Positions 9,634 to 63,092 of a stretch of DNA of 64,000 nucleotides are shown here, one piece after another. The stretch's first letter is position 1, and every line of letters starts with the position of its first letter. The DNA is from Leucoraja ocellata. Lineage: Eukaryota. The notes under the pieces are model-generated. The model saw nothing but the letters and a program-made list of their open reading frames with translations. It did not search any database and had not been told where the DNA came from. The stretch spans positions 7,130,001 through 7,194,000 of the forward strand of contig JAWMAR010000070.1 of assembly GCA_036785375.1 (NCBI GenBank), in the 5' to 3' direction. The position numbers and the translations under genes were made by a program.

Positions 9634-10146
9634 TCACATCACTGTCAGCTTGATATTTAGTCTACATTCCTCTTTGCCAGTGAACCAAGCGCAGGAATAC
9701 ATCCCAACATCACTCTTCTGTAAACCCGTGATGACCAACGAGGCATCCCGTGTCCCATCCACGTTTGTTTCCTTGAACGACCAGCGGCCGGCCCCCCCTG
9801 GATAGGTCGCACCTTTCCCTTTAGTAAACACGGCCAATGTCCCCTTCCCTTTACTCCAGGTGACAGCAAAGTTGCTGGGTCCATCCTTCCCTGTGGGTAC
9901 TTTACAGGGTAGCGTAGCAGAACCACCCTTTGCCGTCACATCCGTGTATTTCATCTTGTTCGCAGCTGGCCTAGCACCGCATTCTGGAGTATCTTGTTTG
10001 TTGACTTGTCGAGGCTCCCGTGCGTTCCACCCGGGCAAGTTTGCTTCCTCTCCCCATTCTCTGGAGATCGGACCTGTTCCAGTTGCGGAGACTTGCCACA
10101 CCATCTCCACAAGGACCATGAATCCTATCCATCTCTGCAGTCCCAT
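9634..10146 (-). CDS. Secreted single V-set Ig-domain protein, type A copy 1 (170 aa, single coding exon)
   Basis: ATG at 10146 follows a polypyrimidine-CAG acceptor. Hydrophobic leader MGLQRWIGFMVLVEMVWQVSA, pro-segment ending NAREPR/QV, and V-set motifs GGSATLPC, VTWSK, DASLVITGLQKSDVGMYSC and CRLNIKLTV. A stop follows directly, with no TM. Confidence 0.85.
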   Translation of the reverse strand: MGLQRWIGFMVLVEMVWQVSATGTGPISREWGEEANLPGWNAREPRQVNKQDTPECGARPAANKMKYTDVTAKGGSATLPCKVPTGKDGPSNFAVTWSKGKGTLAVFTKGKGATYPGGAGRWSFKETNVDGTRDASLVITGLQKSDVGMYSCAWFTGKEECRLNIKLTVM

Positions 10147-10795
10147 GTTCCTGTGGGTGAAACAATGGGTCACCTTATTGCAACTCAGTAGGATTCATGA
10201 TGACATTCCCTGAACCCGCCCAGAGTTGGGGAATCGAGAACCAGAGGACATCGGTTTAAGGCGAGGGGGGGGGGGAAAGATTTAATGGGAAACTGAGGGG
10301 TGACTTTTTTACACAAAGGGTGGAGGGTGTTTGGAACGAGCTGCCGGAAGAGGTAGTTGGGGCAGGTACTATCACAATGATTAAGAAACAGTTAGACAGG
10401 TACATTGATAGGACAGGATTAGAGGGGTAAGGGCCAAACGCAGGCAGGTGGGTCTAGTATTGATGGGACACGTTGGTGGGCGTGGGCAAGTTGGGCCGAA
10501 GGTCTCGCTGTGACTCTATGACTCCATCACTTGTCCCACCCCGGTCATTCCTCCTTCTCCCTGGTCCTGTCTAGCAGAAGGTACAGAAGCTTGAAAGCGC
10601 GCACCACCAGACTCAGGAACAGCTTCTTCCCCTCTGCTATCAGGCTTCTGAACTGGGGGAACAGTGAACAGAGACAATCCCACCCCCATCACTCACAGAC
10701 ACTTGAAGGATCCACAGGGTTGGTTACCAGCTCCGGAGTCTCCACACAGGGTGACGGGGTCGGTCTTGTTCTCATCCCCTGCCATCGCTCGCTCC

Positions 10796-10872
10796 TTTTA
10801 TACCGACTCCCGGCTTCTCCTGCCCCTCATTGTCTGTCCTCACGTACATTCAACCAATCACTGCCTCCCACG
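10796..10872 (-). promoter_or_regulatory. Promoter of gene A1: ERSE (10854-10872) and TATA box (10796-10802)
   Basis: CCAATcactgcctcCCACG on the + strand. TATAAAA on the - strand, ~650 bp upstream of the ATG. Confidence 0.6.
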
Positions 10873-13027
10873 GAGCATTGGCCGGAGTCAGCCGCGACCT
10901 CTCCACCCTCTGCCAAACGTGTCGTTGCATCAGCCGTTAACGTTTAACAAGAACAACGTCATCCCAGCTGCCAGCGGCCAACCAGGCGCCCCACACATCC
11001 TGCTTGTGTCTCCACCACGTCTCGCTTTGGCCACCCATCGGACCAGATGTCCCAGCCACGCCACGTCACCACCACAGCCCTTGGCACCTGCGCTGGTTCC
11101 ACAGTTTATACTCAATCTGAGCCGGCAGCTGGGATGGCGTTGGATCAATTCTTCCTTCCCAACAACCATCAGGCTGTTGAACACGACACGACACTGAGGT
11201 CAACGATGAACGTCTATGGAATGTCCAAGGTTGCACTAATGCCCCTGTCCCACTTAGGAAACCTGAACGGAAACCTCTGGAGACTTAGCGCCCCACCCAA
11301 GGTTTCCGTGCGGTTCACGGAGGTTTTTGTCTGTCTCCCTACCTGCTTCCACTACCTGCAACCTCCGGCAACCACCTGCAACCTCCGGGAACCACCTGCA
11401 ACCTCCGGGAACCTTCGGGACGAAACGTTGCCTATTTCCTTCACTCCATAGATGCTGCTGCACCCGCTGAGTTTCTCCAGCATTTTTGTGTACCTTCGAT
11501 TTTCCAGTATCTGCAGTTTCTTCTTCAACATCAAATAGAACAAGTTGTCCTACAACTTTAGGCTGTGCACGCCACACGAAAGAAGAAGTTGACATGTCTG
11601 TCCCGCCATCCCGGGTATTAACCTGGTGAACCTACGTTGCACTCCCTCAATAGCAAGAATGCCCTTCCTCAAAATGACAGTGAAGTGCTGCCTCTACAGA
11701 GACACCCAATAGACCTGATAGAATGGTATAAAATGATGAGAGGCGTAGATAGCTGAGATAACCTGAAGCAATTTCCCGAAGGCTTTGGAGACGGTGCAGA
11801 AGCAGTTCCCCAGAATGATGTCGGGATCGGAGGTTGTTAGTTATATGGACAGGTTGGATAATCTTGGATTAGTTTCTCTAGAACTTCAGATGTTGAGCGG
11901 AGACCTGACAGAAGGTAATAAAATTCTTAAGGGGTTGGACAGGCTAGATGCAGGAACGTTGTTCCCGATGTTGGGGAAGTCCAGAACTAGGGGTCACAGT
12001 TTAAGGATAAGGGGGAAATCTTTTAGGACCGAGATGAGAAAAACATTTTTCACACAGAGAGTGGTGAATGTGGAATTCTCTGCCACAGAAGGTATTTGAG
12101 GCCAGTTCATTGGCTATATTTAAGAGGGAGTTAGATGTGGCCCTTGTGGCTAAAGGGATCAGGGGGTATGGAGAGAAGGCAGGTACTGGATACTGAGTTT
12201 GATGATCAGCCATGATCATATTGAATGGCGGTGCAGGCTCGAAGGGCCGAATGGCCTCTACTCCTGCACCTATTGTCTATTGTCTACTGTCTATTGTCTA
12301 TTGAGATAGGAAACATTTAAAGATACAAGTGGAGGTAGTTACAATAGTTCAGAGACTTTATCTAAAAAATCTCATGGTCATGCAGGGAATTGAGATTATG
12401 GATCAGGTGCAGGCAGAGGAGATTAGCTGAACTTGGCATCATGTTCAGCACGGACCATGTGGGCCGAAGGGCCTGTTCCTGTGCTGTTCCATGTTCTATG
12501 TTACATAGTCTTCTCAATCACATCTTGAGAAGAACATTTTCCAGAGGTGCCCTGGTACCACCAGTGTGACATTCATTGTATCTGCTGCAGTCAATGAGTG
12601 TGTTGTGTAGACAGCCAGAGGAGAAGATGGGATTTATGTGGAGTTTCATTTTGTAATCATTATTTATTTAATGTCATAGTGTAATAGAGTCATATAGTGA
12701 TACAGTGTGGAAACAGGCCCTTCGGCCCAACTTGCCCACACTGGCCAACATGTCCCAGCTACACTAGTCCCACCTGCCTGTGTTTGGTCCATATCCTTCT
12801 AAATCTGACCTATACCTGTTCCTGTTTAACTGTTTCTTAAACGTCGGGATAGTTTCTGCCTCAACAGCGATGAGTTGACCAGAACGAGACGTGGTGGAGA
12901 CACAAGCAGGATGTGTGGGGCGCCTGGTTGGCCGCTGGCAGCTGGGATGACGTTGTTCTTGTTAAACGTTAACGGCTGATGCAACGACACGTTTGGCAGA
13001 GGGTGGAGAGGTCGCGGCTGACTCCGG

Positions 13028-13113
13028 CCAATGCTCCGTGGGAGGCAGTGATTGGTTGAATGTACGTGAGGGCAGACAATGAGGGGCAGGAGAAGCCGGG
13101 AGTCGGTATAAAA
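13028..13113 (+). promoter_or_regulatory. Promoter of gene B1: CCAAT (13028), ERSE (13037-13055) and TATA (13107-13113)
   Basis: CGTGGgaggcagtgATTGG is the reverse of CCAAT-N9-CCACG. TATAAAA follows. Conserved in all 8 copies. Confidence 0.65.
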
Positions 13114-13134
13114 GGAGCGAGCGATGGCAGGAGA

Positions 13135-13755
13135 TGAGAACAAGACCGACCCCGTCACCCTGTGTGGAGACTCTGGAGCTGGTAACCAACCCTGTGGATC
13201 CTTCAAGTGTCTGTGAGTGATGGGGGTGGGATTGTCTCTGTTCACTGTTCCCCCAGTTCAGAAGCCTGATAGCAGAGGGGAAGAAGCTGTTCCTGAGTCT
13301 GGTGGTGCGCGCTTTCAAGCTTCTGTACCGTCTGCTAGACAGGACCAGGAAGAAGGAGGAATGACTGGGGTGGGACAAGTGGTGGAGTCATAGAGTCACA
13401 GCGAGACCTTCGGCTCAACTTGCCCGCGCCCACCAACGTGTCCCCATCAATACTAGACCCACCTACCTGCGTTTGGCCCTTACCCCCCTAATCCTGTCCT
13501 ATCAATGTACCTGTCTAACTGTTTCTTAATCATTGTGACAGTACCTGCCTCAACTACCTCTTCCGGCAGCTCGTTCCAAACACCCTCCACCCTTTGTGTA
13601 AAAAAGTCACCCCTCAGTTTCCCATGAAATCTTTCCCCCCCTCGCCTTAAACCGATGTCCTCTGGTTCTCGATTCCCCAACTCTGGGCGGGTTCAGGGAA
13701 TGTCATCATGAATCCTACTGAGTTGCAATAAGGTGACCCATTGTTTCACCCACAG
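13135..13755 (+). other. Predicted non-coding exon 1 and ~550-bp intron of gene B1 (donor GTAACC 13182 or GTGAGT 13213; acceptor AG ends 13755)
   Basis: TSS expected ~30 nt after the TATA box. Consensus donors and a polypyrimidine-CAG acceptor 4 nt before the ATG. The intron is filled with LINE/SINE debris. Confidence 0.55.
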
Positions 13756-13759
13756 GAAC

Positions 13760-14299
13760 ATGGGACTGCAGAGATGGATAGGATTCATGGTCCTTGTGGA
13801 GATGGTGTGGCAAGTCTCCGTAACTGGAACAGGTCCGATCTCCAGAGAATGGGGAGAGGAAGCAAACTTGGCCGGGCGGAACGCACGGGCGTATTTCAAA
13901 GTCACCAATAAACCGCTTCCAAGATGCACGAACGAGTCAGATTCTGATGCCATCAGTCATCACCCATCACCGATTAACAAGAAGGTGCTCGTTGCATCTC
14001 TGGGCGGTTCTGTTACGTTGCCATGTAATATATCCATCCTTAAAAATCATTACAGGTTTGTTGAATGGATAAAAGATGGTGTTGAAATTGCCCATTTCCA
14101 TGAGAGAGCGTATGCGCATTATACGGGATCTGATGTTCACTGGAAGTTCGTTGATCACGACGTCTATGTGACTCAGGACGCCACGTTGCTCCTGACAGGT
14201 GTAAAAGAGGAAGATAAAGGGACGTATTCCTGTGTTTGGTCCGTGTATAGAGATAGACCGTTTTGTGAATTATTGATGCAGCTGATGATCTCTCACTGA
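13760..14299 (+). CDS. Secreted single V-set Ig-domain protein, type B copy 1 (179 aa)
   Basis: Same leader as type A. V-set motifs GGSVTLPC, VEWIKDG, DATLLLTGVKEEDKGTYSC and CELLMQLMIS. Acceptor TTGTTTCACCCACAG ends at 13755. Confidence 0.85.
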   Translation: MGLQRWIGFMVLVEMVWQVSVTGTGPISREWGEEANLAGRNARAYFKVTNKPLPRCTNESDSDAISHHPSPINKKVLVASLGGSVTLPCNISILKNHYRFVEWIKDGVEIAHFHERAYAHYTGSDVHWKFVDHDVYVTQDATLLLTGVKEEDKGTYSCVWSVYRDRPFCELLMQLMISH

Positions 14300-15142
14300 T
14301 TCAGCAGGGCCAGTCCCAGGGTCAGTAGCAAAGTCTAGTTTAGTTTAGTTTTGTTCAGAGGTACAACAGGGAAACAAGCCCTTCGGCCACAGAGTCAATG
14401 GGGACCAGTGATCACCCCATATACTAGTTCTATCCCACACACTAGATACAATTTACACTGACCAATTAACCTACAAACCTGCACGTCTCTGGGGTGTGGG
14501 ACGAAACCGGAGCACCCGGATTCCAAAGAGGAAGGAAGATTCCAAGGGGAGTTAGGGGCGACCGTGGCTGACAAGGGAAGTCAGGGACACTATCACAATA
14601 AAAGAGAACAGGTATAACGTTGCAAAGATGAGCGGAAAGCCAGGGGATTGGGTAACTCTTTTAAAGAGCAACAGAAGATAACTAAAAAAGCAATACGGGG
14701 AGAAATGATGAGGTATGAAGGTAAGATAGCCAAGAATAGTAAGGAGGATCGTAAAAGCTTCTTTAGATATGTGAAAAAAATTAGTTCAGACTAAAATTGG
14801 ACCTTTATAGACTAAAAACTTTGGATCCGTCTTCACTAAGGAGAACACAAACAATCTCCCTGATGTATTAGTGGTCAGAGGATCTGGGGACAACGGAGAG
14901 CCAGTGGATGTAGTGTACCTGGACTTGCAGGAAGTATTTGATAAGGTCCCACATAGGAGATTAGTGGGCAAAATTAGAGCACATGGTATTGGGGGAAGGG
15001 CCTGTTTCCATATTGTTTGACTCTGACACTAAGTAGGGAAGAGTAAAGGTATAAAGATGAGCAGCGTGGAAGGTGTGAGCGTGGATCGCATGCAGTGAGG
15101 AGAACTGACCTTGCTTGCTCCGGTAAATGTACGTTTAATGTA

Positions 15143-19733: not shown

Positions 19734-20173
19734 GGGAGCCTCGATCGCCTCGATGCAGCAGTTTGATTTTAAGCCGCTTGGGCGCTGAAAGGCCCCGCGA
19801 ACGGGACGATTCTGCCCATAGAAAGCGTCTGATAAAGTCCGGAACACAAAACATGGGCGGGGGGGGAATCGTCCCCCACCTCCCAAAGCATAGGGGGACA
19901 TGCCCCCTGTCCCCCCCCCCCAGGATTCCTGCCCATGGCGGTCACGATGTCTCCTTCACCGCCGCAGTCTCGACGCCTCTATGATGGCCGCGAAAAACTC
20001 AGATCTCTGGGTTGACCAGAACGAGACGTGGTGGAGACACAAGCAGGATGTGTGGGGCGCCTGGTTGGCCGCTGGCAGCTGGGATGACGTTGTTCTTGTT
20101 AAACGTTAACGGCTGATGCAACGACACATTTGGCAGAGGGTGGAGAGGTCGCGGCTGACTCCGGCCAATGCTC

Positions 20174-20250
20174 CGTGGGAGGCAGTGATTGGTTGAATGT
20201 ACGTGAGGGCAGACAATGAGGGGCAGGAGAAGCCGGGAGTCGGTATAAAA
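20174..20250 (+). promoter_or_regulatory. Promoter of B2 (ERSE 20174-20192, TATA 20244-20250)
   Basis: Same cassette as B1. Confidence 0.6.
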
Positions 20251-20897
20251 GGAGCGAGCGATGGCAGGAGATGAGAACAAGACCGACCCCGTCACCCTGT
20301 GTGGAGACTCCGGAGCTGGTAACCAACCCTGTGGATCCTTCAAGTGTCTGTGAGTGATGGGGGTGGGATTGTCTCTGTTCACTGTTCCCCCAGTTCAGAA
20401 GCCTGATAGCAGAGGGGAAGAAGCTGTTCCTGAGTCTGGTGGTGCGCGCTTTCAAGCTTCTGTACCTTCTGCTAGACAGGACCAGGGAGAAGGAGGAATG
20501 ACAGGGGTGGGACAAGTGATGGAGTCATAGAGTCACAGCGAGACCTTCGGCCCAACTTGCCCGCGCCCACCAACGTGTCCCCATCAATACTAGACCCACC
20601 TGCCTGCGTTTGGCCCTTACCCCTCTAATCCTGTCCTATCAATGTACCTGTCTAACTGTTTCTTAATCATTGTGATAGTACCTGCCTCAACTACCTCTTC
20701 CGGCAGCTCGTTCCAAACACCCTCCACCCTTTGTGTAAAAAAAGTCACCCCTCAGTTTCCCATGAAATCTTTCCCCCCCTCACCTTAAACCGATGTCCTC
20801 TGGTTCTCGATTCCCCAACTCTGGGCGGGTTCAGGGAATGTCATCATGAATCCTACTGAGTTGCAATAAGGTGACCCATTGTTTCACCCACAGGAAC

Positions 20898-21434
20898 ATG
20901 GGGCTGCAGAGATGGATAGGATTCATGGTCCTTGTGGAGATGGTGTGGCAAGTCTCCGTAACTGGAACAGGTCCGATCTCCAGCGAATGGGGAGAGGAAG
21001 CAAACTTGGCCGGGTGGAATGCACGGGCCCCTCGGCAAGTCACCGATGAAACGCTTCCAAGATGCACGGACAAGTCAGATTCTGATGCCATCAGTCATCA
21101 CCTATCAACGATTAACAAGAAGGTGCTCGTTGCATCTCTGGGTGGTTCTGTTACGTTGCCATGTAATGTATCCAACGTTGACAATAGTCCCACGGTTACA
21201 TGGAAAAAAGATGGTGTTGAAATTGCCTATTTCCATAGTAGAGTGCATGAGCGTTATAAGGGATCTGATGTTCACTGGAAGTTCGTGCAACGAAACGTCC
21301 TTTGGGAACAGGACGCCACGTTGCTCCTGACAGGTGTAAAAGAGGAAGATAAAGGGACGTATTCCTGTGTTTGGATCAAGTATCGTCAGAAACCGTTTTG
21401 TGAATTATTGATGCAGCTGATGATCTCTCACTGA
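20898..21434 (+). CDS. Secreted single V-set Ig-domain protein, type B copy 2 (178 aa)
   Basis: Paralogue of 13760..14299 with near-identical frameworks and different loops. NARAPR/QV site present. Confidence 0.85.
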   Translation: MGLQRWIGFMVLVEMVWQVSVTGTGPISSEWGEEANLAGWNARAPRQVTDETLPRCTDKSDSDAISHHLSTINKKVLVASLGGSVTLPCNVSNVDNSPTVTWKKDGVEIAYFHSRVHERYKGSDVHWKFVQRNVLWEQDATLLLTGVKEEDKGTYSCVWIKYRQKPFCELLMQLMISH

Positions 21435-24400: not shown

Positions 24401-26675
24401 AGGCTTGAATCGGCCCGTTCGCGGGGCCTTTCATCGCCCGACGGGGGTTTCAACATTGGTATTGATGTGGATAGAGAACTGGCTGGCAGACAGAAAGCAA
24501 AGAGTAGGAGTAAACGGGTCCTTTTCAGAATGGCAGGCAGTGACTAGTGGGGTACTGCAAGACTCAGTGCTGGGACCCCAGCTATTTACGATATATATTA
24601 ATGATCTGGATGAGGGAGTTGAATGCAACATCTCCAAGTTTGCAGATGGGGGGCAGTGTTAGCTGTGAGGAGGATGCTAGGAGGCTGCAAGGTGACTTGG
24701 ATATGTTGGGTGAGTGGGCAAATGCATGGAAGATGCAGTATAATGTGGATAAATGTGAAGTTATCCATTTTGGTGTAAAAAACAGGAAAGTAGATTATTA
24801 TCTGAATGGTGGCCGATTAGGAAAAGGGGAGATGCAACGAGACCTGGGTGTCATGGTACACCAGTCATTAAAAGTGGGCATGCAGGTGCAGCAGGCAGTG
24901 AAGAAAGAGAATGGTATGTTAACATTCATAGCAAAAGGATTTGAGTATAAGAGCAGGGAGGTTCTACTACAGTTGTACAGAGTCTTGGTGAGACCACACC
25001 TGGAGTATTGCGTACAGTTTTGGTCTCCTAATCTGAGGAAGGACATTATTGCCATAGAGGGAGTACAGAGAAAGTTCACCAGACTGATTCCTGGGATGTC
25101 AGGACTTTATGGCATACTGAGTTGGATGATCAGTATAATCATATTAAATGGCAGTGCAGGCTCGAAGGGCCGAATGGCCTACTCCTGCACCTATTTTCTA
25201 TGTTTCTATGGGAGCCTCGATCGCCTCGATGCAGCAGTTTGATTTTAAGCCGCTCGGGCGCTGAAAGGCCCCGCGAACGGGACGATTCTGCCCATAGAAA
25301 GCGTCTGATAAAGTCCGGAACACAAAACATGGGCGGGGGGGGAATCGTCCCCCACCTCCCAAAGCATAGGGAGACGTGCCCCATGTCCCCCCCCAGGATT
25401 TCCGCCCATGGCGGTCACGATATCTCCTTCACCGCTGCAGTCTCGACGCCTCTTTGATGGCCGCGAAAAACTCCATGTGGGGCGTAGAAGGCCGGATCGG
25501 ATAAAGCGGAAAGTTAATTTCAATGAGGTCCTCCCCCTGACGTGACTGGAAGCTGCTGGTCGACCACTCCCCCTTTGTGACATCACTCGAAGGGGGGTGA
25601 AGGTTTGCCGTTTAATAAGTTGGTTTTCACTATTTTTAAAACGCTATAACTTGTGAACTACAGCATGTAATGTGAAGTGGAGCAGTTTATTTTGTCAAAG
25701 GGGTTAATGTGATTAATAATGTGCGGAGGAGGGGAGGAGGAGAGGGGAGAGAAGGAGGAGGGTGTAGACGAGGGGGAGGGAGTGTAAGAGACTCGCCTGC
25801 GCAGTTGTGGGGTATGGGTGAGTGGTGGAATATTACGTTGGGGGGACGGGTACATCGCAAAGGAATCTCATTTAGATTTCTTGGGAGGAGGCTTTTCATT
25901 GTGGGGGGTGGAATTGCTGAGAGGTTTCATTTACTCCTTATTTATAAAATAATTACGATTGTGGGGAGGGGTGGGTTGGGGGCGGGGGCTCCCCGTTTCA
26001 TTGTGGGGGGGTGGAGTAAGAGAGAGGTTTCATTTCCAGAATTTTCCTTGCTAGGGGATGGGGTGAGTATTGTGGGGTATGGGTGAGTGGTGGAATATTA
26101 CGTTGGGGGAACGGGGCCCAACGGGTCCCACTTGGTCTAGTTATCATTATTTATTTAATGTTTCACGTTTACACCAATCTCTCCACCACCACGAACAAGC
26201 AGCACAAGACGCGACAAGACAGACACCATTTTATGCAGATGCCGAGAAGTGTGATCAGCTCTGGCTGAACAACTAATCTTGTGTGTGGATTCGATAAGCA
26301 GAAGATTTAATGTCATAGTGTTATACAGTCATAGAGTGATACAGCATGGAAACAGGCCCTTTGGCCCAACTTGCCCACATTGGACAACATGTCCCAGCTA
26401 CACTAGTCCCACCTGTCCACGTTTGGTCCATATCCCTCCAAATCTGACCTATCCCTGTTCCTGTCTAGCAGTTTCTTAAACGTCGGGATAGTTTCTGCCT
26501 CAACTGCGATGGGTTGACCAGAACGAGACGTGGTGGAGACACAAGCAGGATGTGTGGGGCGCCTGGTTGGCCGCTGGCAGCTGGGATGACGTTGTTCTTG
26601 TTAAACGTTAACGGCTGATGCAACGACACGTTTGGCAGAGGGTGGAGAGGTCGCGGCTGACTCCGGCCAATGCTC

Positions 26676-26752
26676 CGTGGGAGGCAGTGATTGGTTGAAT
26701 GTACGTGAGGGCAGACAATGAGGGGCAGGAGAAGCCGGGAGTCGGTATAAAA
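26676..26752 (+). promoter_or_regulatory. Promoter of B3 (ERSE 26676-26694, TATA 26746-26752)
   Basis: Same cassette as B1. Confidence 0.6.
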
Positions 26753-27399
26753 GGAGCGAGCGATGGCAGGAGATGAGAACAAGACCGACCCCGTCACCCT
26801 GTGTGGAGACTCCGGAGCTGGTAACCAACCCTGTGGATCCTTCAAGTGTCTGTGAGTGATGGGGGTGGGATTGTCTCTGTTCACTGTTCCCCCAGTTCAG
26901 AAGCCTGATAGCAGAGGGGAAGAAGCTGTTCCTGAGTCTGGTGGTGCGCGCTTTCAAGCTTCTGTACCTTCTGCTAGACAGGACCAGGGAGAAGGAGGAA
27001 TGACCGGGGTGGGACAAGTGATGGAGTCATAGAGTCACAGCGAGACCTTCGGCCCAACTTGCCCGCGCCCACCAACGTGTCCCCATCAATACTAGACCCA
27101 CCTGCCTGCGTTTGGCCCTTACCCCTCTAATCCTGTCCTATCAATGTACCTGTCTAACTGTTTCTTAATCATCGTGATAGTACCTGCCTCAACTACCTCT
27201 TCCGGCAGCTCGTTCCAAACACCCTCCACCCTTTGTGTAAAAAAGTCACCCCTCAGTTTTCCATGAAATCTTTCCCCCCCCTCGCCTTAAACCGATGTCC
27301 TCTGGTTCTCGATTCCCCAACTCTGGGCGGGTTCAGGGAATGTCATCATGAATCCTACTGAGTTGCAATAAGGTGACCCATTGTTTCACCCACAGGAAC

Positions 27400-27936
27400 A
27401 TGGGACTGCAGAGATGGATAGGATTCATGGTCCTTGTGGAGATGGTGTGGCAAGTCTCCGCAACTGGAACAGGTCCGATCTCCAGAGAATGGGGAGAGGA
27501 AGCAAACTTGGCCGGGCGGAACGCACGGGCCCCTCGGCAAGTCACCAATGAACCGCTTCCAAGATGCATGAACGAGTCAGATTCTGATGCCATCAGTCAT
27601 CACCTATCAACGATTAACAAGAAGGTGCTCGTTGCATCTCTGGGTGGTTCTGTTACTTTGCCATGTAATGTATCCAACGTTGACAATAGTCCCGAGGTTA
27701 CATGGAATAAAGATGGTGTTGAAATTGCCTATTTCCATAGTAGAGTGCATGAGCGTTATACAGGATCTGATGTTCACTGGAAGTTCGTGCAACGAAACGT
27801 CCTTTGGGAACAGGACGCCACGTTGCTCCTGACAGGTGTAAAAGAGGAAGATAAAGGGACGTATTCCTGTGTTTGGATCAAGTATCGTCAGAAACCGGTT
27901 TGTGAATTATTGATGCAGCTGATGATCTCTCACTGA
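27400..27936 (+). CDS. Secreted single V-set Ig-domain protein, type B copy 3 (178 aa)
   Basis: Close paralogue of copy B2 with an intact ORF and all four Cys. Confidence 0.85.
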   Translation: MGLQRWIGFMVLVEMVWQVSATGTGPISREWGEEANLAGRNARAPRQVTNEPLPRCMNESDSDAISHHLSTINKKVLVASLGGSVTLPCNVSNVDNSPEVTWNKDGVEIAYFHSRVHERYTGSDVHWKFVQRNVLWEQDATLLLTGVKEEDKGTYSCVWIKYRQKPVCELLMQLMISH

Positions 27937-41607: not shown

Positions 41608-42123
41608 TCACTTCACTGTCAGCTTGATATTTAGTCTACATTCCTTTTGGCCAGTGAACCAAGAGCAGGAATATATCCCAATATCAGTCTCGAGTAAACC
41701 TATGATGACCAACGAGGCATCCCGTGTCCCATCCACGTTTGTATTCATGAACCTCCAGCGGCCGACCCCCCCTGGATAAGTCGCTCCTTTCCCTTTAGTA
41801 AACACGCCCAGTATCCCGCTCCCTTTACTCCAGGTGATCATAAAATCCGCGGGTCCAGTCTTCCCTGTGGGTACTTTACAGGGTAGCGTAGCAGAACCAC
41901 CCTTGCGTGCCGTCACATCCGTGAATTTCATCTTGGTCGCAGCTGGCTTAGCACCGCATTCTGGAGAACTTTGTTTTTTGACTTGTCGAGGCTCCCGTGC
42001 GTTCCACCCGGGCAAGTTTGCTTCCTCTCCCCATTCTCTGGAGATCGGACCTGTTCCAGTTGCGGAGACTTGCCACACCATCTCCACAAGGACCATGAAT
42101 CCTATCCATCTCTGCAGTCCCAT
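41608..42123 (-). CDS. Secreted single V-set Ig-domain protein, type A copy 2 (171 aa)
   Basis: Paralogue of 9634..10146 with GGSATLPC, ITWSK, DASLVIIGLLETDIGIYSC and CRLNIKLTVK. Confidence 0.85.
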   Translation of the reverse strand: MGLQRWIGFMVLVEMVWQVSATGTGPISREWGEEANLPGWNAREPRQVKKQSSPECGAKPAATKMKFTDVTARKGGSATLPCKVPTGKTGPADFMITWSKGSGILGVFTKGKGATYPGGVGRWRFMNTNVDGTRDASLVIIGLLETDIGIYSCSWFTGQKECRLNIKLTVK

Positions 42124-42889: not shown

Positions 42890-43094
42890 GAGCATTGGCC
42901 GGAGTCAGCCGCGACCTCTCCACTCTCTGCCAAACGTGTCGTTGCATCAGCCGTTAACGTTTAACAAGAACAACGTCATCCCAGCTGCCAGCGGCCAACC
43001 AGGCGCCCCACACATCCTGCTTGTGTCTCCACCACGTCTCGCTTTGGCCACCCATCGGACCAGATGTCCCAGCCACGCCACGTCACCACCACAG

Positions 43095-55000: not shown

Positions 55001-58000
55001 TGCTTTCTCCCCATATCCCTTGATTCCGTTAGCACTAAGAGCTTAATCTAACTCTCTCTTGAAAACATCCAGTGAATTGGCCTCCACTGCCTTCTGTGGC
55101 AGAGAATTCCACAGATTCACAATTCTCTGGGTGAAAATGTTTTTTTCATCTCAGTCCTAAATGGCCGACACCTTATTCTTAAACTGTGTGACCACTGGTT
55201 CTGGACTCCCCCAACATCGGGAATATTTTTCCTGCACCTATCTAGTCTGTCCGATCCCTTAAGAATTTTATATGTTTTTATAAATATGTTCCAGTCTCAT
55301 CCTAAATTCCAGTGAATACAAGCACAGTCGATCCATTCTTTCGTCATATGTCAGGGGTGGAAGATTGCAACCTTCACGAGGTCCACCCTGTTTCGACTAA
55401 TGCAATCAATTCGACGTGCACAAACGGAAGATCAAATAGAACAAAGGTAGACAAAAATGCTGGAGAGACTCAGCGGGTGCAGCAGCATCTATGTAGCAAA
55501 GGAAATAGGCAATGTTTCGGAACGAAACCCTTCTGGAAATAGGCAACGTTTCAAGCCAAAACCCGGAAGGGTTTCGGCCCGAAACGTTGCCTATTTCCTT
55601 CGCTCCATAGATGCTGCTGCACCCGCTGAGTTTCTCCAGGATTTTTGTGTACCTTCGATTTTCCAGTATCTGCAGTTTCTTCTTCAACATCAAATAGAAC
55701 AAGTTGTCCTACAACTTTAGGCTGTGCACGCCACACGAAAGAAGAAGTTGACATGTCAGTCCCGCCATCCCGGGTATTAACCTGGTGAACCTACGTTGCA
55801 CTCCCTCAATAGCAAGAATGCCCTTCCTCAAGATGACAGTGAAGGGCCGCCACTACACAGACACCCAGTAGACCTGATAGAATGATATAAAATTATGAGA
55901 GGCGTAGATAGCTGAGATAACCTGAAGCAATTTCCCGAAGGCTTTGGAGACGGTGCAGAAACGGTTCCCCAGAATGATGTCGGGATCGGAGGTTGTTAGT
56001 TATATGGACAGGTTGGATAATCTTGGATTGGTTTCTCTAGAACTTCAGATGTTGAGCGGAGACCTGACAGAAGGTAATAAAATTCTTAAGGGGTTGGACA
56101 GGCTAGATGCAGGAACGTTGTTTCCGATGTTGGGGAAGTCCAGAACAAGGGGTCACAGTTTAAGGATAAGGGGGAAATCTTTTAGGACCGAGATGAGAAA
56201 AACATTTTTCACACAGAGAGTGGTGAATCTGTGGAATTCTCTGCCGCAGAAGGTAGTTGAGGCCACAGTTCATTGGCTTTTTTTAGGAGGGAGATAGATG
56301 TGGCCCTTGTGGCTAAAGGGATCAGGGGGTATGGAGCGAAGGCAGATACAGGATACTGAGTTGGATGATCAGCCATGATCATATTGAATGGCGGTGCAGG
56401 CTCGAAGGGCCGAATGGTCAACTCCTGCACCTATTGTCTATTGTCTATTGAGATAGGAAACATTTAAAGATGTGCGAAGCACAGAGGGTGGTGGGTGCCT
56501 GGAACACGATGCTGTGGGTGGTGGAGGCAGATACAATAGTTCAGAGTCTTTATCTAAAAAATCTCATGGATATGCAGGGAATTGAGATTATGGATCAGGT
56601 GCAGGCAGAGGAGATTAGCTGAACTTGGCAGCATGTTCAGCACGGACCTTGTGGGCCGAAGGGCCTGTTCCTGTGCTGTTCCATGTTCTATGTTACATCA
56701 TCTTCTCAATCACATCTTGAGAAGAACATTTTCCAGAGGTGCCCTGGTACCACCAGTGTGACATTCATTGTATCTGCTGCAGTCAACGAGTGTGTTGTGT
56801 AGACAGCCAGAGGAGAAGATGGGATTTATGTGCAGTTTCATTTTGTAATCATTATTTATTTAATGTCATAGTGTAATAGAGTCATAGAGTGATACAGCGT
56901 GGAAACAGGCCCTTCGGCCCAACTTGCCCACACTGGCCAACATGTCCCAGCTACACTAGTCTCACCTGCCTGTGTTTGGTCCATATCCCTCCAAACCTGT
57001 CCTCCCCATGTACATGACTCACTGTTTCTTAAACATTGGGATCTAAATGTTGCCTCACCAACGCAAGATGACCTCCCAACCTCTATACTCCATACTGTGA
57101 CTGATGAAGGCCAAAGTACCAAAAGCCTTTTTGACCACCGTATCTATCAACTGCATCTTCAAGGAACCATGTACCTTCACTCATAGATCCCTCTGCTATA
57201 CAACATTCCCCAGAGCTGGACTATTCACTGTGTAGGTCCTGCACATGTTAGAAACATAGAAACATAGAAACTAGGTGCAGGAGTAGGCCATTCAGCCCTT
57301 CGAGCCTGCACCGCCATTCAATATGATCATGGCTGATCATCCAACACAGTTTCCAGTACCTGCCTTCTCTCCATACCCTCTGATCCCCTTAGCCACAAGG
57401 GCCACATCTAACTCCCTCTTCAATATAGCCATTGAATTGGCCTCGACTACCCTCTGGTTACCCTCTCCCCAAGACTCCCCAAAACACAACATCTCACATT
57501 ACTCTGTATTAAATTCCATCAACCGTTCCTCAGCCCAACTGGCCAATATTTCAGGATCCTGCTGCAATTTTTCACAACCATCTCCACTATCTGCAAAACC
57601 GCCTACTTTAGTGTCATAGAAACATAGAAAATAGGTGCAGGAGTAGAGGCCATTCGGCCCTTCGAGCCTGCACCGCTATTCAATATGATCATGGCTGATC
57701 ATCCAACTCAGTATCCTGTACCAGCCTTCTCTCCATACCCCCTGATCCCTTTAGCCACAAGGGCCACATCTAACTCCCTCTTAAATATAGTCATCTGCCT
57801 TTACTTCTGTTCCTGTTCTCAACATTTTCCACATGTTGTTCCGTCCCCGTGTGGTCATGGACAATGTTGGACACAGCTCATAGAAGCCGGCGATGTTGCC
57901 CGTAGTGAGCAAGAGTTGCACAAAGTTCACACCCAACTCAATGCTGGCGTACAAAGAATCACTCACACCGGCTGTCTTCAAGAGAGTTTATTTCCATTAA

Positions 58001-58426
58001 TGATACATTTACCAATGCAAGCACGATCTGTCCCATTGCACTACATTTGCCCCATATCCCCCTAAACCTTTCCCTGTCCCAAGTGTGTATTAAATATTCT
58101 TACAATTCCCACCCCACCAGACAGTTCTATAAACCCACCGCCCCCTGAGTGAAAATGTTGCCCCTCAGGTTCCTATTAAATCTTGCCCCTCTAACCTTAA
58201 ACTTATGTCCCCCTGGTTCTTGATTCCCGTACCCCAGGTAAAAGATGTTTTGTGTTCACCCCTCTATTCCCCTCATGATGAATTAAGTGACTACAATATA
58301 GAATGCTGTTGTTGGCCTAAGTATGTGAAGTTTATAATGATGGATGTTACTGTGTGTTTGTGCTGTCCTGCCACTGCCTGTTGCTTCTGTGACATGGGGG
58401 GGCCTGTGCTGGGTCAGTGTGAGGTT

Positions 58427-58939
58427 TCACATCACTGTCAGCTTGGTATTTAGTCTACATTCCTCTTTGCCAGTGAACCAAGCGCAGGAATACATCCCAA
58501 CATCACTCTTCTGTAAACCCGTGATGACCAACGAGGCATCCCGTGTCCCATCCACGTTTGTTTCCTTGAACGACCAGCGGCCGGCCCCCCCTGGATAGGT
58601 CGCACCTTTCCCTTTAGTAAACACGGCCAATGTCCCCTTCCCTTTACTCCAGGTGACAGCAAAGTTGCTGGGTCCATCCTTCCCTGTGGGTACTATACAG
58701 GGTAGCGTAGCAGAACCACCCTTTGCCGTCACATCCGTGAATTTCATCTTGTTCGCAGCTGGCCTAGCACCGCATTCTGGAGTATCTTGTTTGTTGACTT
58801 GTCGAGGCTCCCGTGCGTTCCACCCGGGCAAGTTTGCTTCCTCTCCCCATTCTCTGGAGATCGGACCTGTTCCAGTTGCGGAGACTTGCCACACCATCTC
58901 CACAAGGACCATGAATCCTATCCATCTCTGCAGTCCCAT
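58427..58939 (-). CDS. Secreted single V-set protein, type A copy 1' (segmental duplicate of 9634..10146)
   Basis: Differs from A1 by 3 aa (Y>F, K>I, I>T). Offset 48793. Confidence 0.85.
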   Translation of the reverse strand: MGLQRWIGFMVLVEMVWQVSATGTGPISREWGEEANLPGWNAREPRQVNKQDTPECGARPAANKMKFTDVTAKGGSATLPCIVPTGKDGPSNFAVTWSKGKGTLAVFTKGKGATYPGGAGRWSFKETNVDGTRDASLVITGLQKSDVGMYSCAWFTGKEECRLNTKLTVM

Positions 58940-59588
58940 GTTCCTGTGGGTGAAACAATGGGTCACCTTATTGCAACTCAGTAGGATTCATGATGACATT
59001 CCCTGAACCCGCCCAGAGTTGGGGAATCGAGAACCAGAGGACATCGGTTTAAGGCGAGGGGGGGGGGGAAAGATTTAATGGGAAACTGAGGGGTGACTTT
59101 TTTACACAAAGGGTGGAGGGTGTTTGGAACGAGCTGCCGGAAGAGGTAGTTGGGGCAGGTACTATCACAATGATTAAGAAACAGTTAGACAGGTACATTG
59201 ATAGGACAGGATTAGAGGGGTAAGGGCCAAACGCAGGCAGGTGGGTCTAGTATTGATGGGACACGTTGGTGGGCGTGGGCAAGTTGGGCCGAAGGTCTCG
59301 CTGTGACTCTATGACTCCATCACTTGTCCCACCCCGGTCATTCCTCCTTCTCCCTGGTCCTGTCTAGCAGAAGGTACAGAAGCTTGAAAGCGCGCACCAC
59401 CAGACTCAGGAACAGCTTCTTCCCCTCTGCTATCAGGCTTCTGAACTGGGGGAACAGTGAACAGAGACAATCCCACCCCCATCACTCACAGACACTTGAA
59501 GGATCCACAGGGTTGGTTACCAGCTCCGGAGTCTCCACACAGGGTGACGGGGTCGGTCTTGTTCTCATCTCCTGCCATCGCTCGCTCC

Positions 59589-59665
59589 TTTTATACCGAC
59601 TCCCGGCTTCTCCTGCCCCTCATTGTCTGCCCTCATGTACATTCAACCAATCACTGCCTCCCACG
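59589..59665 (-). promoter_or_regulatory. Promoter of A1' (ERSE 59647-59665, TATA 59589-59595)
   Basis: Same cassette as A1. Confidence 0.6.
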
Positions 59666-61827
59666 GAGCATTGGCCGGAGTCAGCCGCGACCTCTCCACC
59701 CACTGCCAAACGTGTCGTTGCATCAGCCGTTAACGTTTAACAAGAACAACGTCATCCCAGCTGCCAGCGGCCAACCAGGCGCCCCACACATCCTGCTTGT
59801 GTCTCCACCACGTCTCGCTTTGGCCACCCATCGGACCAGATGTCCCAGCCACGCCACGTCACCACCACAGCCCTTGGCACCTGCGCTGGTTCCACAGTTT
59901 ATACTCAATCTGAGCCGGCAGCTGGGATGGCGTTGGATCAATTCTTCCTTCCCAACAACCATCAGGCTGTTGAACACGACACGACACTGAGGTCAACGAT
60001 GAACGTCTATGGAATGTCCAAGGTTGCACTAATGCCCCTGTCCCACTTAGGAAACCTGAACGGAAACCTCTGGAGACTTAGCGCCCCACCCAAGGTTTCC
60101 GTGCGGTTCACGGAGGTTTTTGTCTGTCTCCCTACCTGCTTCCACTACCTGCAACCTCCGGCAACCACCTGCAACCTCCGGCAACCACCTGCAACCTCCG
60201 GGAACCTTCGGGACGAAACGTTGCCTATTTCCTTCACTCCATAGATGCTGCTGCACCCGCTGAGTTTCTCCAGCATTTTTGTGTACCTTCGATTTTCCAG
60301 TATCTGCAGTTTCTTCTTCAACATCAAATAGAACAAGTTGTCCTACAACTTTAGGCTGTGCACGCCACACGAAAGAAGAAGTTGACATGTCTGTCCCGCC
60401 ATCCCGGGTATTAACCTGGTGAACCTACGTTGCACTCCCTCAATAGCAAGAATGCCCTTCCTCAAAATGACAGTGAAGTGCTGCCTCTACAGAGACACCC
60501 AATAGACCTGATAGAATGGTATAAAATGATGAGAGGCGTAGATAGCTGAGATAACCTGAAGCAATTTCCCGAAGGCTTTGGAGACGGTGCAGAAGCAGTT
60601 CCCCAGAATGATGTCGGGATCGGAGGTTGTTAGTTATATGGACAGGTTGGATAATCTTGGATTAGTTTCTCTAGAACTTCAGATGTTGAGCGGAGACCTG
60701 ACAGAAGGTAATAAAATTCTTAAGGGGTTGGACAGGCTAGATGCAGGAACGTTGTTCCCGATGTTGGGGAAGTCCAGAACTAGGGGTCACAGTTTAAGGA
60801 TAAGGGGGAAATCTTTTAGGACCGAGATGAGAAAAACATTTTTCACACAGAGAGTGGTGAATGTGGAATTCTCTGCCACAGAAGGTATTTGAGGCCAGTT
60901 CATTGGCTATATTTAAGAGGGAGTTAGATGTGGCCCTTGTGGCTAAAGGGATCAGGGGGTATGGAGAGAAGGCAGGTACTGGATACTGAGTTTGATGATC
61001 AGCCATGATCATATTGAATGGCGGTGCAGGCTCGAAGGGCCGAATGGCCTACTCCTGCACCTATTGTCTATTGTCTACTGTCTATTGTCTATTGAGATAG
61101 GAAACATTTAAAGATACAAGTGGAGGTAGTTACAATAGTTCAGAGACTTTATCTAAAAAATCTCATGGACATGCAGGGAATTGAGATTATGGATCAGGTG
61201 CAGGCAGAGGAGATTAGCTGAACTTGGCATCATGTTCAGCACGGACCTTGTGGGCCGAAGGGCCTGTTCCTGTGCTGTTCCATGTTCTATGTTACATCAT
61301 CTTCTCAATCACATCTTGAGAAGAACATTTTCCAGAGGTGCCCAGGTACCACCAGTGTGACATTCATTGTATCTGCTGCAGTCAATGAGTGTGTTGTGTA
61401 GACAGCCAGAGGAGAAGATGGGATTTATGTGGAGTTTCATTTTGTAATCATTATTTATTTAATATCATAGTGTAATAGAGTCATAGAGTGATACAGCGTG
61501 GAAACAGGCCCTTCGGCCCAACTTGCCCACACTGGCCAACATGTCCCAGCTACACTAGTCCCACCTATCCACGTTTGGTCCATATCCTTCTAAATCTGAC
61601 CTATACCTGTTCCTGTTTAACTGTTTCTTAAACGTTGGGATAGTTTCTGCCTCAACTGCGATGAGTTGACCAGAACGAGACGTGGTGGAGACACAAGCAG
61701 GATGTGTGGGGCGCCTGGTTGGCCGCTGGCAGCTGGGATGACGTTGTTCTTGTTAAACGTTAACGGCTGATGCAACGACACGTTTGGCAGAGGGTGGAGA
61801 GGTCGCGGCTGACTCCGGCCAATGCTC

Positions 61828-61904
61828 CGTGGGAGGCAGTGATTGGTTGAATGTACGTGAGGGCAGACAATGAGGGGCAGGAGAAGCCGGGAGTCGGTAT
61901 AAAA
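61828..61904 (+). promoter_or_regulatory. Promoter of B1' (ERSE 61828-61846, TATA 61898-61904)
   Basis: Same cassette as B1. Confidence 0.6.
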
Positions 61905-62552
61905 GGAGCGAGCGATGGCAGGAGATGAGAACAAGACCGACCCCGTCACCCTGTGTGGAGACTCCGGAGCTGGTAACCAACCCTGTGGATCCTTCAAGTG
62001 TCTGTGAGTGATGGGGGTGGGATTGTCTCTGTTCACTGTTCCCCCAGTTCAGAAGCCTGATAGCAGAGGGGAAGAAGCTGTTCCTGAGTCTGGTGGTGCG
62101 CGCTTTCAAGCTTCTGTACCTTCTGCTAGACAGGACCAGGGAGAAGGAGGAATGACCGGGGTGGGACAAGTGATGGAGTCATAGAGTCACAGCGAGACCT
62201 TCGGCCCAACTTGCCCGCGCCCACCAATGTGTCCCCATCAATACTAGACCCACCTGCCTGCGTTTGGCCCTTACCCCTCTAATCCTGTCCTATCAATGTA
62301 CCTGTCTAACTGTTTCTTAATCATTGTGATAGTACCTGCCCCAACTACCTCTTCCGGCAGCTCGTTCCAAACACCCTCCACCCTTTGTGTAAAAAAGTCA
62401 CCCCTCAGTTTCCCATGAAATCTTTCCCCCCCCCTCGCCTTAAACCGATGTCCTCTGGTTCTCGATTCCCCAACTCTGGGCGGGTTCAGGGAATGTCATC
62501 ATGAATCCTACTGAGTTGCAATAAGGTGACCCATTGTTTCACCCACAGGAAC

Positions 62553-63092
62553 ATGGGACTGCAGAGATGGATAGGATTCATGGTCCTTGTGGAGATGGTG
62601 TGGCAAGTCTCCGCAACTGGAACAGGTCCGATCTCCAGAGAATGGGGAGAGGAAGCAAACTTGGCCGGGCGGAACACACGGGCGTATTTCAAAGTCACCA
62701 ATGAACCGCTTCCAAGATGCACGAACGAGTCAGATTCTGATGCCATCAGTCATCACCCATCACCGATTAACAAGAAGGTGCTCGTTGCATCTCTGGGTGG
62801 TTCTGTTACGTTGCCATGTAATATATCCATCCTTAAAAATCATTACAGGGTTGTTCAATGGAAAAAAGATGGTGTTCAAATTGCCAGTTTCCATGAGAGA
62901 GCGTATGCGCGTTATACGGGGTCTGATGTTCACTGGAAGTTCGTTGATCACGACGTCTATATGGCTCAGGACGCCACGTTGCTCCTGACAGGTGTAAAAG
63001 AGGAAGATACAGGGACGTATTCCTGTGTTTGGTTCCATTATAGAGATAGACCGTTTTGTGAATTATTGATGCAGCTGATGATCTCTCACTGA
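62553..63092 (+). CDS. Secreted single V-set protein, type B copy 1' (segmental duplicate of 13760..14299)
   Basis: Offset 48793 from B1. Intact ORF with 11 aa differences in the V domain. Confidence 0.85.
   Translation: MGLQRWIGFMVLVEMVWQVSATGTGPISREWGEEANLAGRNTRAYFKVTNEPLPRCTNESDSDAISHHPSPINKKVLVASLGGSVTLPCNISILKNHYRVVQWKKDGVQIASFHERAYARYTGSDVHWKFVDHDVYMAQDATLLLTGVKEEDTGTYSCVWFHYRDRPFCELLMQLMISH

What the first reader, a model, noticed from the sequence alone, without database searches (positions are those of the whole stretch)
9634..63092. Amplified cluster of secreted, germline-complete single V-domain ('nanobody-like') proteins with a pro-peptide
Seen: eight paralogues, each with leader, pro-segment and V domain in ONE coding exon. 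Canonical V-set B-Cys, C-Trp and DxGxYxC motifs are present. A stop follows the G strand, then a poly(A) signal. There is no TM, C domain, J-type FGxG motif or RSS. Known: Ig/TCR/IgNAR have split leaders and rearrange; NITR, MDIR, CD300 and TREM are mostly multi-exon membrane receptors; VCBPs carry two V domains plus a chitin-binding domain. Inference: an apparently undescribed family of soluble, diversified binding proteins (innate immune, mucosal, reproductive or glandular) in an elasmobranch-like genome. I do not recognise the gene.
Basis: partly seen in the sequence, partly recalled or inferred. Interest (0 to 1): 0.92.

Follow-up and report, generated by a model that had tools for sequence, protein, structure and literature searches.

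The report
Skate secreted PVR-like single-V gene family
A skate-like genome carries a tandem array of small genes that each appear to encode a secreted single immunoglobulin V domain, most like the tip domain of the poliovirus receptor/nectin family, with a near-identical front end and fast-changing binding loops; no paper found describes it.

Summary
The window has 8 V-set exons, 7 intact and 1 frameshifted (c5). Each intact copy has its start codon, hydrophobic leader, a roughly 25-residue segment ending in RxxR, and a complete V domain in one exon, with a stop right after the G strand. I found no RSS, no FGxG, and no further Ig exon.

New here:
- A short upstream exon is spliced to 4 nt before the ATG.
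- A 1.03-kb 5' cassette (promoter, upstream exon, intron, leader and pro-segment) is 99-100% identical in all 8 copies. Identity drops about 3 codons after the RxxR.
- dN/dS in the V part is 1.4-3.5 within type B and 1.9 within type A. In type B the changes cluster in the BC, C'C'', DE and FG loops.
- Four cysteines are invariant in 16 of 16 family sequences, two of them an extra pair.
- The best solved-structure match for every type is domain 1 of human PVR/CD155, then nectins, CD226, CD96 and TIGIT. The PVR lock-and-key motifs are mostly lost.

The only relatives found are predicted, unnamed proteins of two skates and one electric ray. Eight literature searches found no description.

First-stage notes report the same family in neighbouring windows of this genome.

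My reading: a batoid family of secreted, diversifying single-domain binders whose ligand is unknown.

The parts
27400..27936 (+). c4 (type B) coding sequence, ATG to stop, 178 aa, in one exon
   Evidence: ORF; V-set 40.5 bits; sequence read
20898..21434 (+). c3 (type B) coding sequence, 178 aa
13760..14299 (+). c2 (type B) coding sequence, 179 aa
62553..63092 (+). c8 (type B) coding sequence, 179 aa; recent duplicate of c2 with 19 substitutions in 540 nt
9634..10146 (-). c1 (type A) coding sequence, 170 aa
58427..58939 (-). c7 (type A) coding sequence, 170 aa; recent duplicate of c1 with 3 substitutions, all non-synonymous
41608..42123 (-). c6 (type A) coding sequence, 171 aa
35014..35613 (+). 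c5 pseudogene (nearest type C): family HMM match split over three frames; 5-nt insertion in the leader and a second frame break near the F strand
26512..27545 (+). c4 homogenised 5' cassette: CCAAT boxes and ERSE-like site, TATAAAAG at 26746-26753, upstream exon, intron, leader and pro-segment up to about 3 codons past RxxR. By offset from the repeat arms, the equivalents lie at about 12872-13905, 20010-21043, 34174-35212 and 61665-62698 (+), and about 10003-11036, 41978-43053 and 58794-59829 (-).
   Evidence: identity profile and boundaries; repeat arms; sequence
26763..26851 (+). c4 upstream exon as modelled in L. erinacea, from the in-frame ATG to the last base before the GTGAGT donor at 26852. 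Equivalents: 13124-13212, 20261-20349, 34424-34512, 61915-62003 (+); 10697-10785, 42714-42802, 59490-59578 (-).
   Evidence: tblastn with residues 1-31 of P0001, of which 1-30 aligned: 8 of 8 copies, 100%; donor read
26852..27395 (+). c4 intron (GT...AG, 544 nt); positions 26896-27328 are a high-copy repeat, antisense to an open frame with a LINE-tail-like peptide
   Evidence: depth and loose ends; ORF 26601-27017(-)
26676..26694 (-). CCAAT-N9-CCACG (ERSE consensus, recalled), about 52-70 nt upstream of the TATA box; one per cassette
   Evidence: 8 matches against 0.12 expected; all 8 are copies of one cassette
3501..14500 (.). recent segmental duplication with 52294-63293: 34 differences in 9000 nt outside the genes

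Best explanation
This is a batoid (skate and ray) multigene family of small, probably secreted proteins. Each protein is one V-set domain of the PVR/nectin type.

Shown here:
- Each gene has a 1.03-kb 5' cassette that is 99-100% identical in all 8 copies. It spans a TATA promoter with CCAAT/ERSE-like sites, a short upstream exon, a 544-nt intron, and the first 49 or so codons.
- The V domains behind that cassette fall into old lineages (A, B, C-like) that are shared with Leucoraja erinacea.
- Within lineages, non-synonymous change exceeds synonymous change. In type B it clusters in the BC, C'C'', DE and FG loops.
- Four cysteines are invariant.

Inferred:
- Translation starts at the conserved Met (MGLQRW).
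- A 21-residue signal peptide is cut after VSA.
- An acidic pro-segment of about 25 residues is removed at RxxR by a furin-type convertase.
- The mature chain of about 124-133 residues has an N-terminal arm tied by the extra disulfide to the end of the FG loop.
- The loop end of the domain binds a ligand.
- Gene conversion keeps the prepro cassette uniform, while selection keeps the mature domains different. This is the same design as prepro-toxin or antimicrobial-peptide families.

The most likely role is a germline-encoded set of soluble recognition or decoy proteins at a host-pathogen or immune-regulatory interface. I give that role about 0.35 on its own.
For: Family and fold:
- V-set passes in 7 of 8 copies.
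- The best PDB match is human PVR D1 for the family profile (E 4.4e-13), the Narcine member (3.2e-9), c4B (2e-6) and c1A (6.6e-5). Nectin-1/2/3, CD226, CD96 and TIGIT follow.
- Relatives over the full length: 8 clusters, all batoid. Of the 150 best hits among 1.84 billion representatives, only 2 match the profile end to end. The next best single domain scores 44 bits, against 138-180 within the family.

Gene model:
- The exon-1 peptide is present in 8 of 8 copies.
- GTGAGT donor, cacag|G acceptor, and gaacATGg start context.
- The gene models of three other species end at the same stop.

Cassette:
- Mean pairwise identity is 0.99-1.00 up to c4 position 27545, then 0.57-0.69.
- Contigs from two other coded organisms hold the cassette with 2 differences in 354 nt and 2 in 442 nt.

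Selection:
- dN/dS is 1.39-3.53 for B-B pairs and 1.85-1.91 for A-A pairs. Fisher p values are 0.0065, 0.0099, 0.11 and 0.13.
- c2 and c8 differ at 19 of 540 nt, where 2.0 are expected from the flanks (Poisson 9e-13).
- ORFs remain intact although dS between A and B is 0.75-0.97.

Prepro features:
- 16 of 16 sequences have an RxxR before the first Cys, and exactly 4 Cys.
- The internal Met is conserved in Narcine, while the modelled N-terminal extensions are unrelated.
Against: - No RNA evidence. No listed run is on record as RNA, and the four runs laid gave contigs that cross the intron-exon border.
The extra disulfide and the position of the loops are therefore inferred from sequence.
- The leader has a Glu inside its hydrophobic core, and no signal-peptide predictor was available.
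- NCBI's L. erinacea models start 31 residues earlier.
- The dN/dS pairs are not independent, 2 of the 4 Fisher tests are not significant, and short conversion tracts could contribute to the signal.
- The poly(A) signals lie 298-435 nt after the stop. In c4 the signal falls inside a high-copy repeat.
- The loop definition was made after seeing the variation.
- The ligand and the tissue of expression are unknown.
Confidence: 0.55

Rival explanations
1. The molecule is the same (a secreted single V domain), but its role is not immune. It could be a fast-evolving reproductive, egg-case, gland or chemical-signalling protein of batoids.
For: Lineage-restricted, amplified families with dN/dS above 1 are also typical of reproductive proteins. 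The ERSE-like promoter site would fit a heavy-secretion gland. Nothing here ties the genes to immune tissue.
Against: The closest domains (PVR, nectins, CD226, CD96, TIGIT) act in adhesion, virus entry and lymphocyte control, although nectins also act in the testis. In type B the variation sits at the CDR-like loop end. Neither point is decisive.
Confidence: 0.17
2. Translation starts at the upstream-exon ATG, as in NCBI's L. erinacea models. That would give a 31-residue N-terminal extension, so the hydrophobic stretch would act as a long signal or a type II anchor rather than a plain signal peptide.
For: Seven L. erinacea models (P0001, P0002, P0004-P0007, P0157) carry the extension. It is open, in frame and 100% conserved in 8 of 8 window copies.
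Against: That ATG lies 17 nt after the first base of TATAAAAG, which is upstream of where a TATA-driven start site is expected (textbook spacing, recalled). The Rhinoraja model starts at the internal Met. The Narcine model's extension is unrelated in sequence, while its internal Met is conserved. The whole cassette, intron included, is conserved, so conservation of the peptide says nothing. The hydrophobic stretch is only about 14 residues long and holds a Glu.
Confidence: 0.1
3. The array is not functional: decaying or unexpressed duplicates carried along by segmental duplication in a transposon-rich region.
For: One of 8 copies is a pseudogene. The region is full of LINE fragments. There is no RNA evidence. 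dN/dS is near 0.8-0.9 between types.
Against: ORFs and all Ig core residues are intact in 7 of 8 copies here and in 9 models from three other species, although dS between types is 0.75-0.97. Within type B, the framework strands are invariant while the loops change. dN/dS is significantly above 1 in 2 of 4 tests, which neutral decay does not give.
Confidence: 0.1
4. The V exons belong to larger receptor genes of the nectin/PVR or TIGIT kind, whose C2, TM or cytoplasmic exons lie further away.
For: The nearest known domains all sit in membrane proteins. Only the window could be checked.
Against: An in-frame stop follows the G strand in 7 of 7 intact copies and in 9 of 9 models from other species. 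No further Ig exon was found by the family HMM. The 6 kb between c4 and c5 holds RT fragments and repeats, and the 10 other fragments tested (of 29) have no Pfam match. Neighbouring genes start every 6.5-7.7 kb.
Confidence: 0.05

Closest known systems
Poliovirus receptor (PVR/CD155) and nectins, membrane-distal V domain (D1)
   Same: This is the best sequence match to solved structures for all three types and for the family profile. The aligned AX6G 'lock' is kept in c1, c7, two L. erinacea members and Narcine. The T(Y/F)P 'key' is kept in Narcine. NCBI's automatic name for the Narcine member is 'nectin-1-like'.
   Different: There are no C2 domains, TM or tail. The key is lost in 15 of 16 sequences, and the lock is lost in types B and C. 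The family adds an N-terminal arm, an extra Cys pair and an RxxR pro-segment. It is tandemly amplified with hypervariable loops. Scores against PVR D1 are only 25-52 bits.
Soluble CD155 splice forms and TIGIT (single PVR-type V domain)
   Same: A PVR-type V domain acting without the rest of the adhesion molecule. Soluble CD155 forms are said to compete with membrane forms (review passage read in PMC9152184).
   Different: Those are splice variants, or a TM/ITIM receptor, of single-copy genes. Here the soluble form is the gene's only product, and there are many diverging genes.
VCBPs of amphioxus and Ciona, and teleost NITR / soluble immune-type receptors (recalled, apart from the carp SITR title and abstract in the listing)
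   Same: Germline-encoded, non-rearranging, diversified V-type IgSF families thought to act in innate recognition.
   Different: VCBPs have two V domains plus a chitin-binding domain. NITRs are membrane receptors with a J-like motif. None has this prepro cassette or a PVR-type V. No sequence tie was seen here.
IgNAR V domains and camelid VHH
   Same: A single V domain acts as the whole binder. An extra disulfide ties the CDR3 region to another part of the domain (recalled for IgNAR).
   Different: Those are somatically rearranged and joined to C domains. Here there is no RSS, J or C. Antibody V domains rank below PVR in every search.
Prepro design of conotoxin and antimicrobial-peptide gene families (recalled)
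   Same: A near-invariant signal and pro region ends at a basic cleavage site, followed by a hypervariable mature part.
   Different: Here the mature part is a 120-130-residue Ig domain, not a short peptide. The invariance also covers the promoter and intron, which points to gene conversion.

Membership tests
Pfam V-set (PF07686) | Score above the curated cut-off of 26 bits | tested here: met
   7 of 8 copies score 29.2-40.5 bits; the c5 pseudogene fails
Pfam V-set (PF07686) | B-strand Cys, C-strand Trp and D-x-G-x-Y-x-C | tested here: met
   Invariant in 16 of 16 aligned sequences
Nectin/PVR family | The V domain is closest to D1 of PVR and nectins | tested here: met
   PVR D1 is the top PDB match in 4 of 4 searches. 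For the Narcine member, 25 of 29 listed matches at E<=0.01 are PVR, nectin or CD96.
Nectin/PVR family | AX6G 'lock' in C'C'' (passage in PMC10486284) | tested here: inconclusive
   Kept at the aligned place in 2 of 7 intact window copies (c1, c7). c6 has G in place of A, and the 4 type B copies lack the G. Kept in P0005, P0006 and Narcine.
Nectin/PVR family | T(Y/F)P 'key' in the FG loop | tested here: not met
   0 of 7 intact window copies. 1 of 16 family sequences (Narcine, TYP aligned to TFP of PVR).
Nectin/PVR family | V-C2-C2 ectodomain, TM and cytoplasmic tail | tested here: not met
   The stop follows the G strand, there is no further Ig exon, and there is no hydrophobic tail
TIGIT-like receptors | One V domain followed by a TM and an ITIM tail | tested here: not met
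   The protein ends 10-11 residues after the last Cys in 7 of 7 intact copies
Rearranging antigen receptors (Ig, TCR, IgNAR) | An RSS flanking the V exon | tested here: not met
   0 matches for the 12- and 23-spacer consensus at up to 3 mismatches
Rearranging antigen receptors (Ig, TCR, IgNAR) | J-type FGxG or WGxG in the G strand, and C domains | tested here: not met
   The G strands read C-E-L-L-M-Q-L-M-I-S-H and C-R-L-N-I-K-L-T-V-M. No C exon was found.
VCBP | Two V domains plus a chitin-binding domain | tested here: not met
   One V domain and no other Pfam domain
Proprotein-convertase substrates | A basic R-x-x-R site between the signal peptide and the mature domain, which is cleaved | tested here: inconclusive
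   The motif is present in 16 of 16 sequences, 9-13 residues before the first Cys, and lies at the cassette's 3' edge. Cleavage cannot be tested here.

The most novel reading that the evidence does not exclude
Batoids carry a germline 'single-domain antibody-like' humoral repertoire. Dozens of secreted V domains derived from a PVR-type domain are each tuned by selection, and perhaps by micro-conversion, in four loops at one end of the domain. An N-terminal arm disulfide-tied to the FG loop would act as an extra loop. All copies would be driven by one homogenised, possibly ER-stress-responsive, prepro cassette. They would work as innate recognition or decoy proteins against pathogens that target nectin/PVR-type receptors.
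Probability: 0.3. Interest if true: 0.85.

Novelty: new variant of a known kind. Interest (0 to 1): 0.62.

Why it matters
Non-rearranging, diversified V-domain families are rare. They bear on how vertebrates use Ig domains for recognition outside the RAG system. This one is large and lineage-restricted, and it derives from the PVR/nectin branch, whose members are virus receptors and lymphocyte checkpoint ligands.

It also gives a clean case where gene conversion and diversifying selection meet at a sharp border inside one exon. If the proteins are secreted binders, they would be small natural single-domain scaffolds with one extra disulfide.

All the data needed to test expression (public skate RNA-seq) already exist, but they could not be reached here.

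Tried and rejected
- RNA evidence. The look-up of sequencing runs listed no holder on record as RNA. The one read-laying run (runs X1, X2, X4 and X6 of the 8 listed) gave short contigs that run straight across the acceptor at 27395/27396, with very high depth over repeats, so I read them as DNA. They say nothing about expression. I had guessed from the word share (0.83) that X1 might be RNA; that guess was wrong.
- Wider relatives. Three word-index searches and one full HMMER search found no shark, chimaera or bony-fish member. The list of 150 is ranked by summed score, so single-domain relatives below about 72 bits would not be shown. Absence from sharks is therefore not shown.
- Atlas look-alikes of P0001 gave only generic V-set clusters and no structure.
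- Split-leader idea. I considered a donor after the leader (acag|gtcc) with an open intron. I dropped it because the models of three species read straight through, and the segment holds the conserved RxxR and an invariant Cys.
- Transposon-carried V exon. I rejected this. In one search the V exon and the 5' part of the cassette have depths 100 to 10,000 times lower than the flanking repeats. The tool warns that depth is not copy number, so this is a weak hint only.
- Assembly artefact for c1/c7 and c2/c8. This is unlikely, because the two blocks differ at 34 sites in 9 kb and at 19 sites in the c2/c8 exon.
- Literature. Searches found no description of the family. For PMC10115646 (little skate genome) I read found passages only: 'immunoglobulin' and 'nectin' each occur 0 times in the main text. 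For PMC7286890 I read the outline and abstract only. Supplements were closed and not requested; gene-family tables there could list this family.
- I built no joined exon 1 + exon 2 sequence from the window. The spliced proteins I used are the database models, exactly as the tools returned them.

Full report
WHAT IS THERE

The window holds eight ORFs with an Ig V domain: c1 9634-10173(-), c2 13733-14299(+), c3 20871-21434(+), c4 27373-27936(+), c5 35043-35516(+), c6 41608-42150(-), c7 58427-58966(-) and c8 62526-63092(+).
- Pfam V-set passes its cut-off in 7 of 8 (29.2-40.5 bits against 26). c5 fails.
- A family HMM run on all six-frame open stretches of 25 aa or more (1680 fragments) finds these eight V exons and no other. 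It splits c5 over three frames.
- c5 has a 5-nt insertion in the leader. It is a pseudogene.
- The copies fall into type A (c1, c6, c7), type B (c2, c3, c4, c8) and a C-like pseudogene.
- Window 3501-14500 repeats at 52294-63293 with 34 differences in 9 kb. c1/c7 and c2/c8 are therefore recent duplicates.
- The DNA between the genes is mostly LINE reverse-transcriptase fragments (RVT_1) and other repeats.

GENE MODEL

Seven predicted proteins of Leucoraja erinacea, one of Rhinoraja longicauda and one of Narcine bancroftii match over the full length.
- The L. erinacea models add a 30-residue peptide from an upstream exon. tblastn finds it at 100% identity before all 8 copies.
- In c4 the layout is as follows:
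  - TATAAAAG at 26746-26753.
  - The in-frame upstream ATG at 26763.
  - A GTGAGT donor at 26852.
  - A cacag|G acceptor, with exon 2 starting at 27396.
  - The ATG at 27400 in a gaacATGg context.
  - The stop at 27934-27936.
- The upstream ATG lies only 17 nt after the start of the TATA box. The Rhinoraja model starts at the internal Met. Narcine keeps that Met behind an unrelated extension. I therefore take the internal Met as the start and the upstream exon as 5' UTR. This is an inference.
- The intron holds a high-copy repeat at 26896-27328 (depth and loose ends).
- AATAAA or ATTAAA follows the stop by 298-435 nt.
- No RSS was found: 0 matches for either spacer at up to 3 mismatches. There is no FGxG.
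- Ten open fragments between c4 and c5, chosen from 29 as not obviously transposon, have no Pfam match.

THE PROTEIN
- After a 21-residue leader ending V-S-A, the chains are 149-158 residues long (15.9-17.9 kDa).
- All 16 family sequences have an RxxR 9-13 residues before the first Cys.
- All 16 have exactly four Cys: one in the N-terminal arm, the B- and F-strand pair, and one at the end of the FG loop. I infer that the two extra Cys pair with each other.
- There is no hydrophobic C-terminus.
- The signal peptide, the convertase cleavage and the extra disulfide are all inferred. No predictor or structure tool was available.

RELATIVES
- Against all PDB chain sequences, the family profile's best match is domain 1 of human PVR/CD155 (E 4.4e-13). 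JAML, CD226, nectin-2 and TIGIT follow.
- The single sequences give the same first hit: Narcine 3.2e-9, c4B 2e-6, c1A 6.6e-5.
- PVR-family docking uses an AX6G lock and a T(Y/F)P key (passage in PMC10486284).
  - At the aligned places, the lock is kept in c1, c7, P0005, P0006 and Narcine, and is lost in types B and C.
  - The key is kept only in Narcine.
- In the full HMMER search, 1916 proteins pass E 1e-3. Of the 150 listed, only the skate representative and the Narcine protein match the profile end to end.
- The rest are multi-Ig proteins of bony fish named butyrophilin-like, CD276-like or CAR-like. Their best single domain scores 44 bits, against 138-180 within the family.
- So the V domain belongs to the PVR/nectin branch, but the architecture fails that family's other defining features.

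EVOLUTION
- From c4 position 26512 to 27545, all 8 copies are 99-100% identical, intron included. About three codons after the RxxR, identity falls to 0.57-0.69.
- Between types A and B, dS in the V part is 0.75-0.97. The uniform cassette therefore reflects gene conversion, not recent origin.
- Contigs of two other coded organisms carry the cassette with 2 differences in 354 nt and 2 in 442 nt.
- A tree of 17 sequences groups c6 with an L. erinacea protein (support 89/81) and c2/c8 with two others (92/90). The lineages therefore predate the species split.
- In the V part, dN/dS is 1.39-3.53 among B copies, 1.85-1.91 among A copies, and 0.76-0.90 between types.
- Fisher tests give p = 0.0065, 0.0099, 0.11 and 0.13. 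The pairs share branches, so they are not independent.
- c2 and c8 differ at 19 of 540 exon sites, where 2.0 are expected from their flanks (Poisson 9e-13).
- In type B the variable positions form four patches (BC, C'C'', DE, FG). The A, B, C', D, E, F and G strands are invariant. I drew the patches after seeing the data. Type A variation is more spread out.

PROMOTER

There is one per cassette, 8 in all, against 0.12 expected in the window. They are copies of one sequence, so this is one event. The consensus and its link to ER stress are recalled, not tested.

WHAT COULD NOT BE DONE

There is no RNA evidence.

LITERATURE

Eight searches found no description of the family or of its accession numbers. 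The main text of the little skate genome paper mentions neither immunoglobulin nor nectin (found passages only). Supplements were not seen.

EARLIER NOTES

First-stage readers noted the same family in neighbouring windows of this genome, from about 61 kb before to about 325 kb after this one. Those notes are unchecked.

VERDICT

The family is real, conserved among batoids, derived from a PVR-type V domain, and shows the signs of a functional, diversifying, probably secreted binder. Its expression, processing and ligand remain open. I rate it a new variant of a known kind, with interest 0.62.

Noticed in passing
window 26676-26694 (-) and the 7 equivalent sites (10854, 13037, 20174, 34337, 42871, 59647, 61828): A perfect CCAAT-N9-CCACG (ER-stress element consensus, recalled) with a second CCAAT box on the other strand, about 52-80 nt upstream of the TATA box in every cassette. 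There are 8 matches against 0.12 expected, but all are copies of one sequence.
   Followed up: partly
window 26896-27328 (intron of c4) and 27958-28767 (downstream of c4): Very high-copy repeats by contig depth. The intronic one is antisense to an open frame ending in a LINE-tail-like peptide. The candidate poly(A) signal of c4 lies inside the downstream repeat.
   Followed up: partly
window 14057-14245 against 62850-63038: Within an 11-kb duplication that is otherwise about 99.6% identical, the c2/c8 differences come in tight clusters (for example 4 changes within 5 nt in the FG loop). This could mean micro-conversion from other copies rather than single mutations.
   Followed up: partly
window 49530-51764 (+): An uninterrupted 744-aa ORF with a reverse-transcriptase domain (RVT_1, E 2.3e-33). 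It could be a young LINE copy.
   Followed up: partly
window 39200-41005 (+): Overlapping ORFs with an RT domain (RVT_1, E 1.8e-13) and a Cys-rich upstream ORF. They look like a broken retroelement different from the LINEs.
   Followed up: partly
window 29663-30266 (+): A region open in three frames, made of a repeated proline-rich unit of about 30 residues, downstream of c4. Similar short matches occur downstream of c2 and c3 (about 15783 and 22918).
   Followed up: no
window 10465-11036 and 12876-13444; 59258-59829 and 61667-62235: The A and B genes of each head-to-head pair carry their cassettes as 98% inverted repeats only about 1.84 kb apart. That arrangement could favour conversion or inversion.
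   Followed up: no
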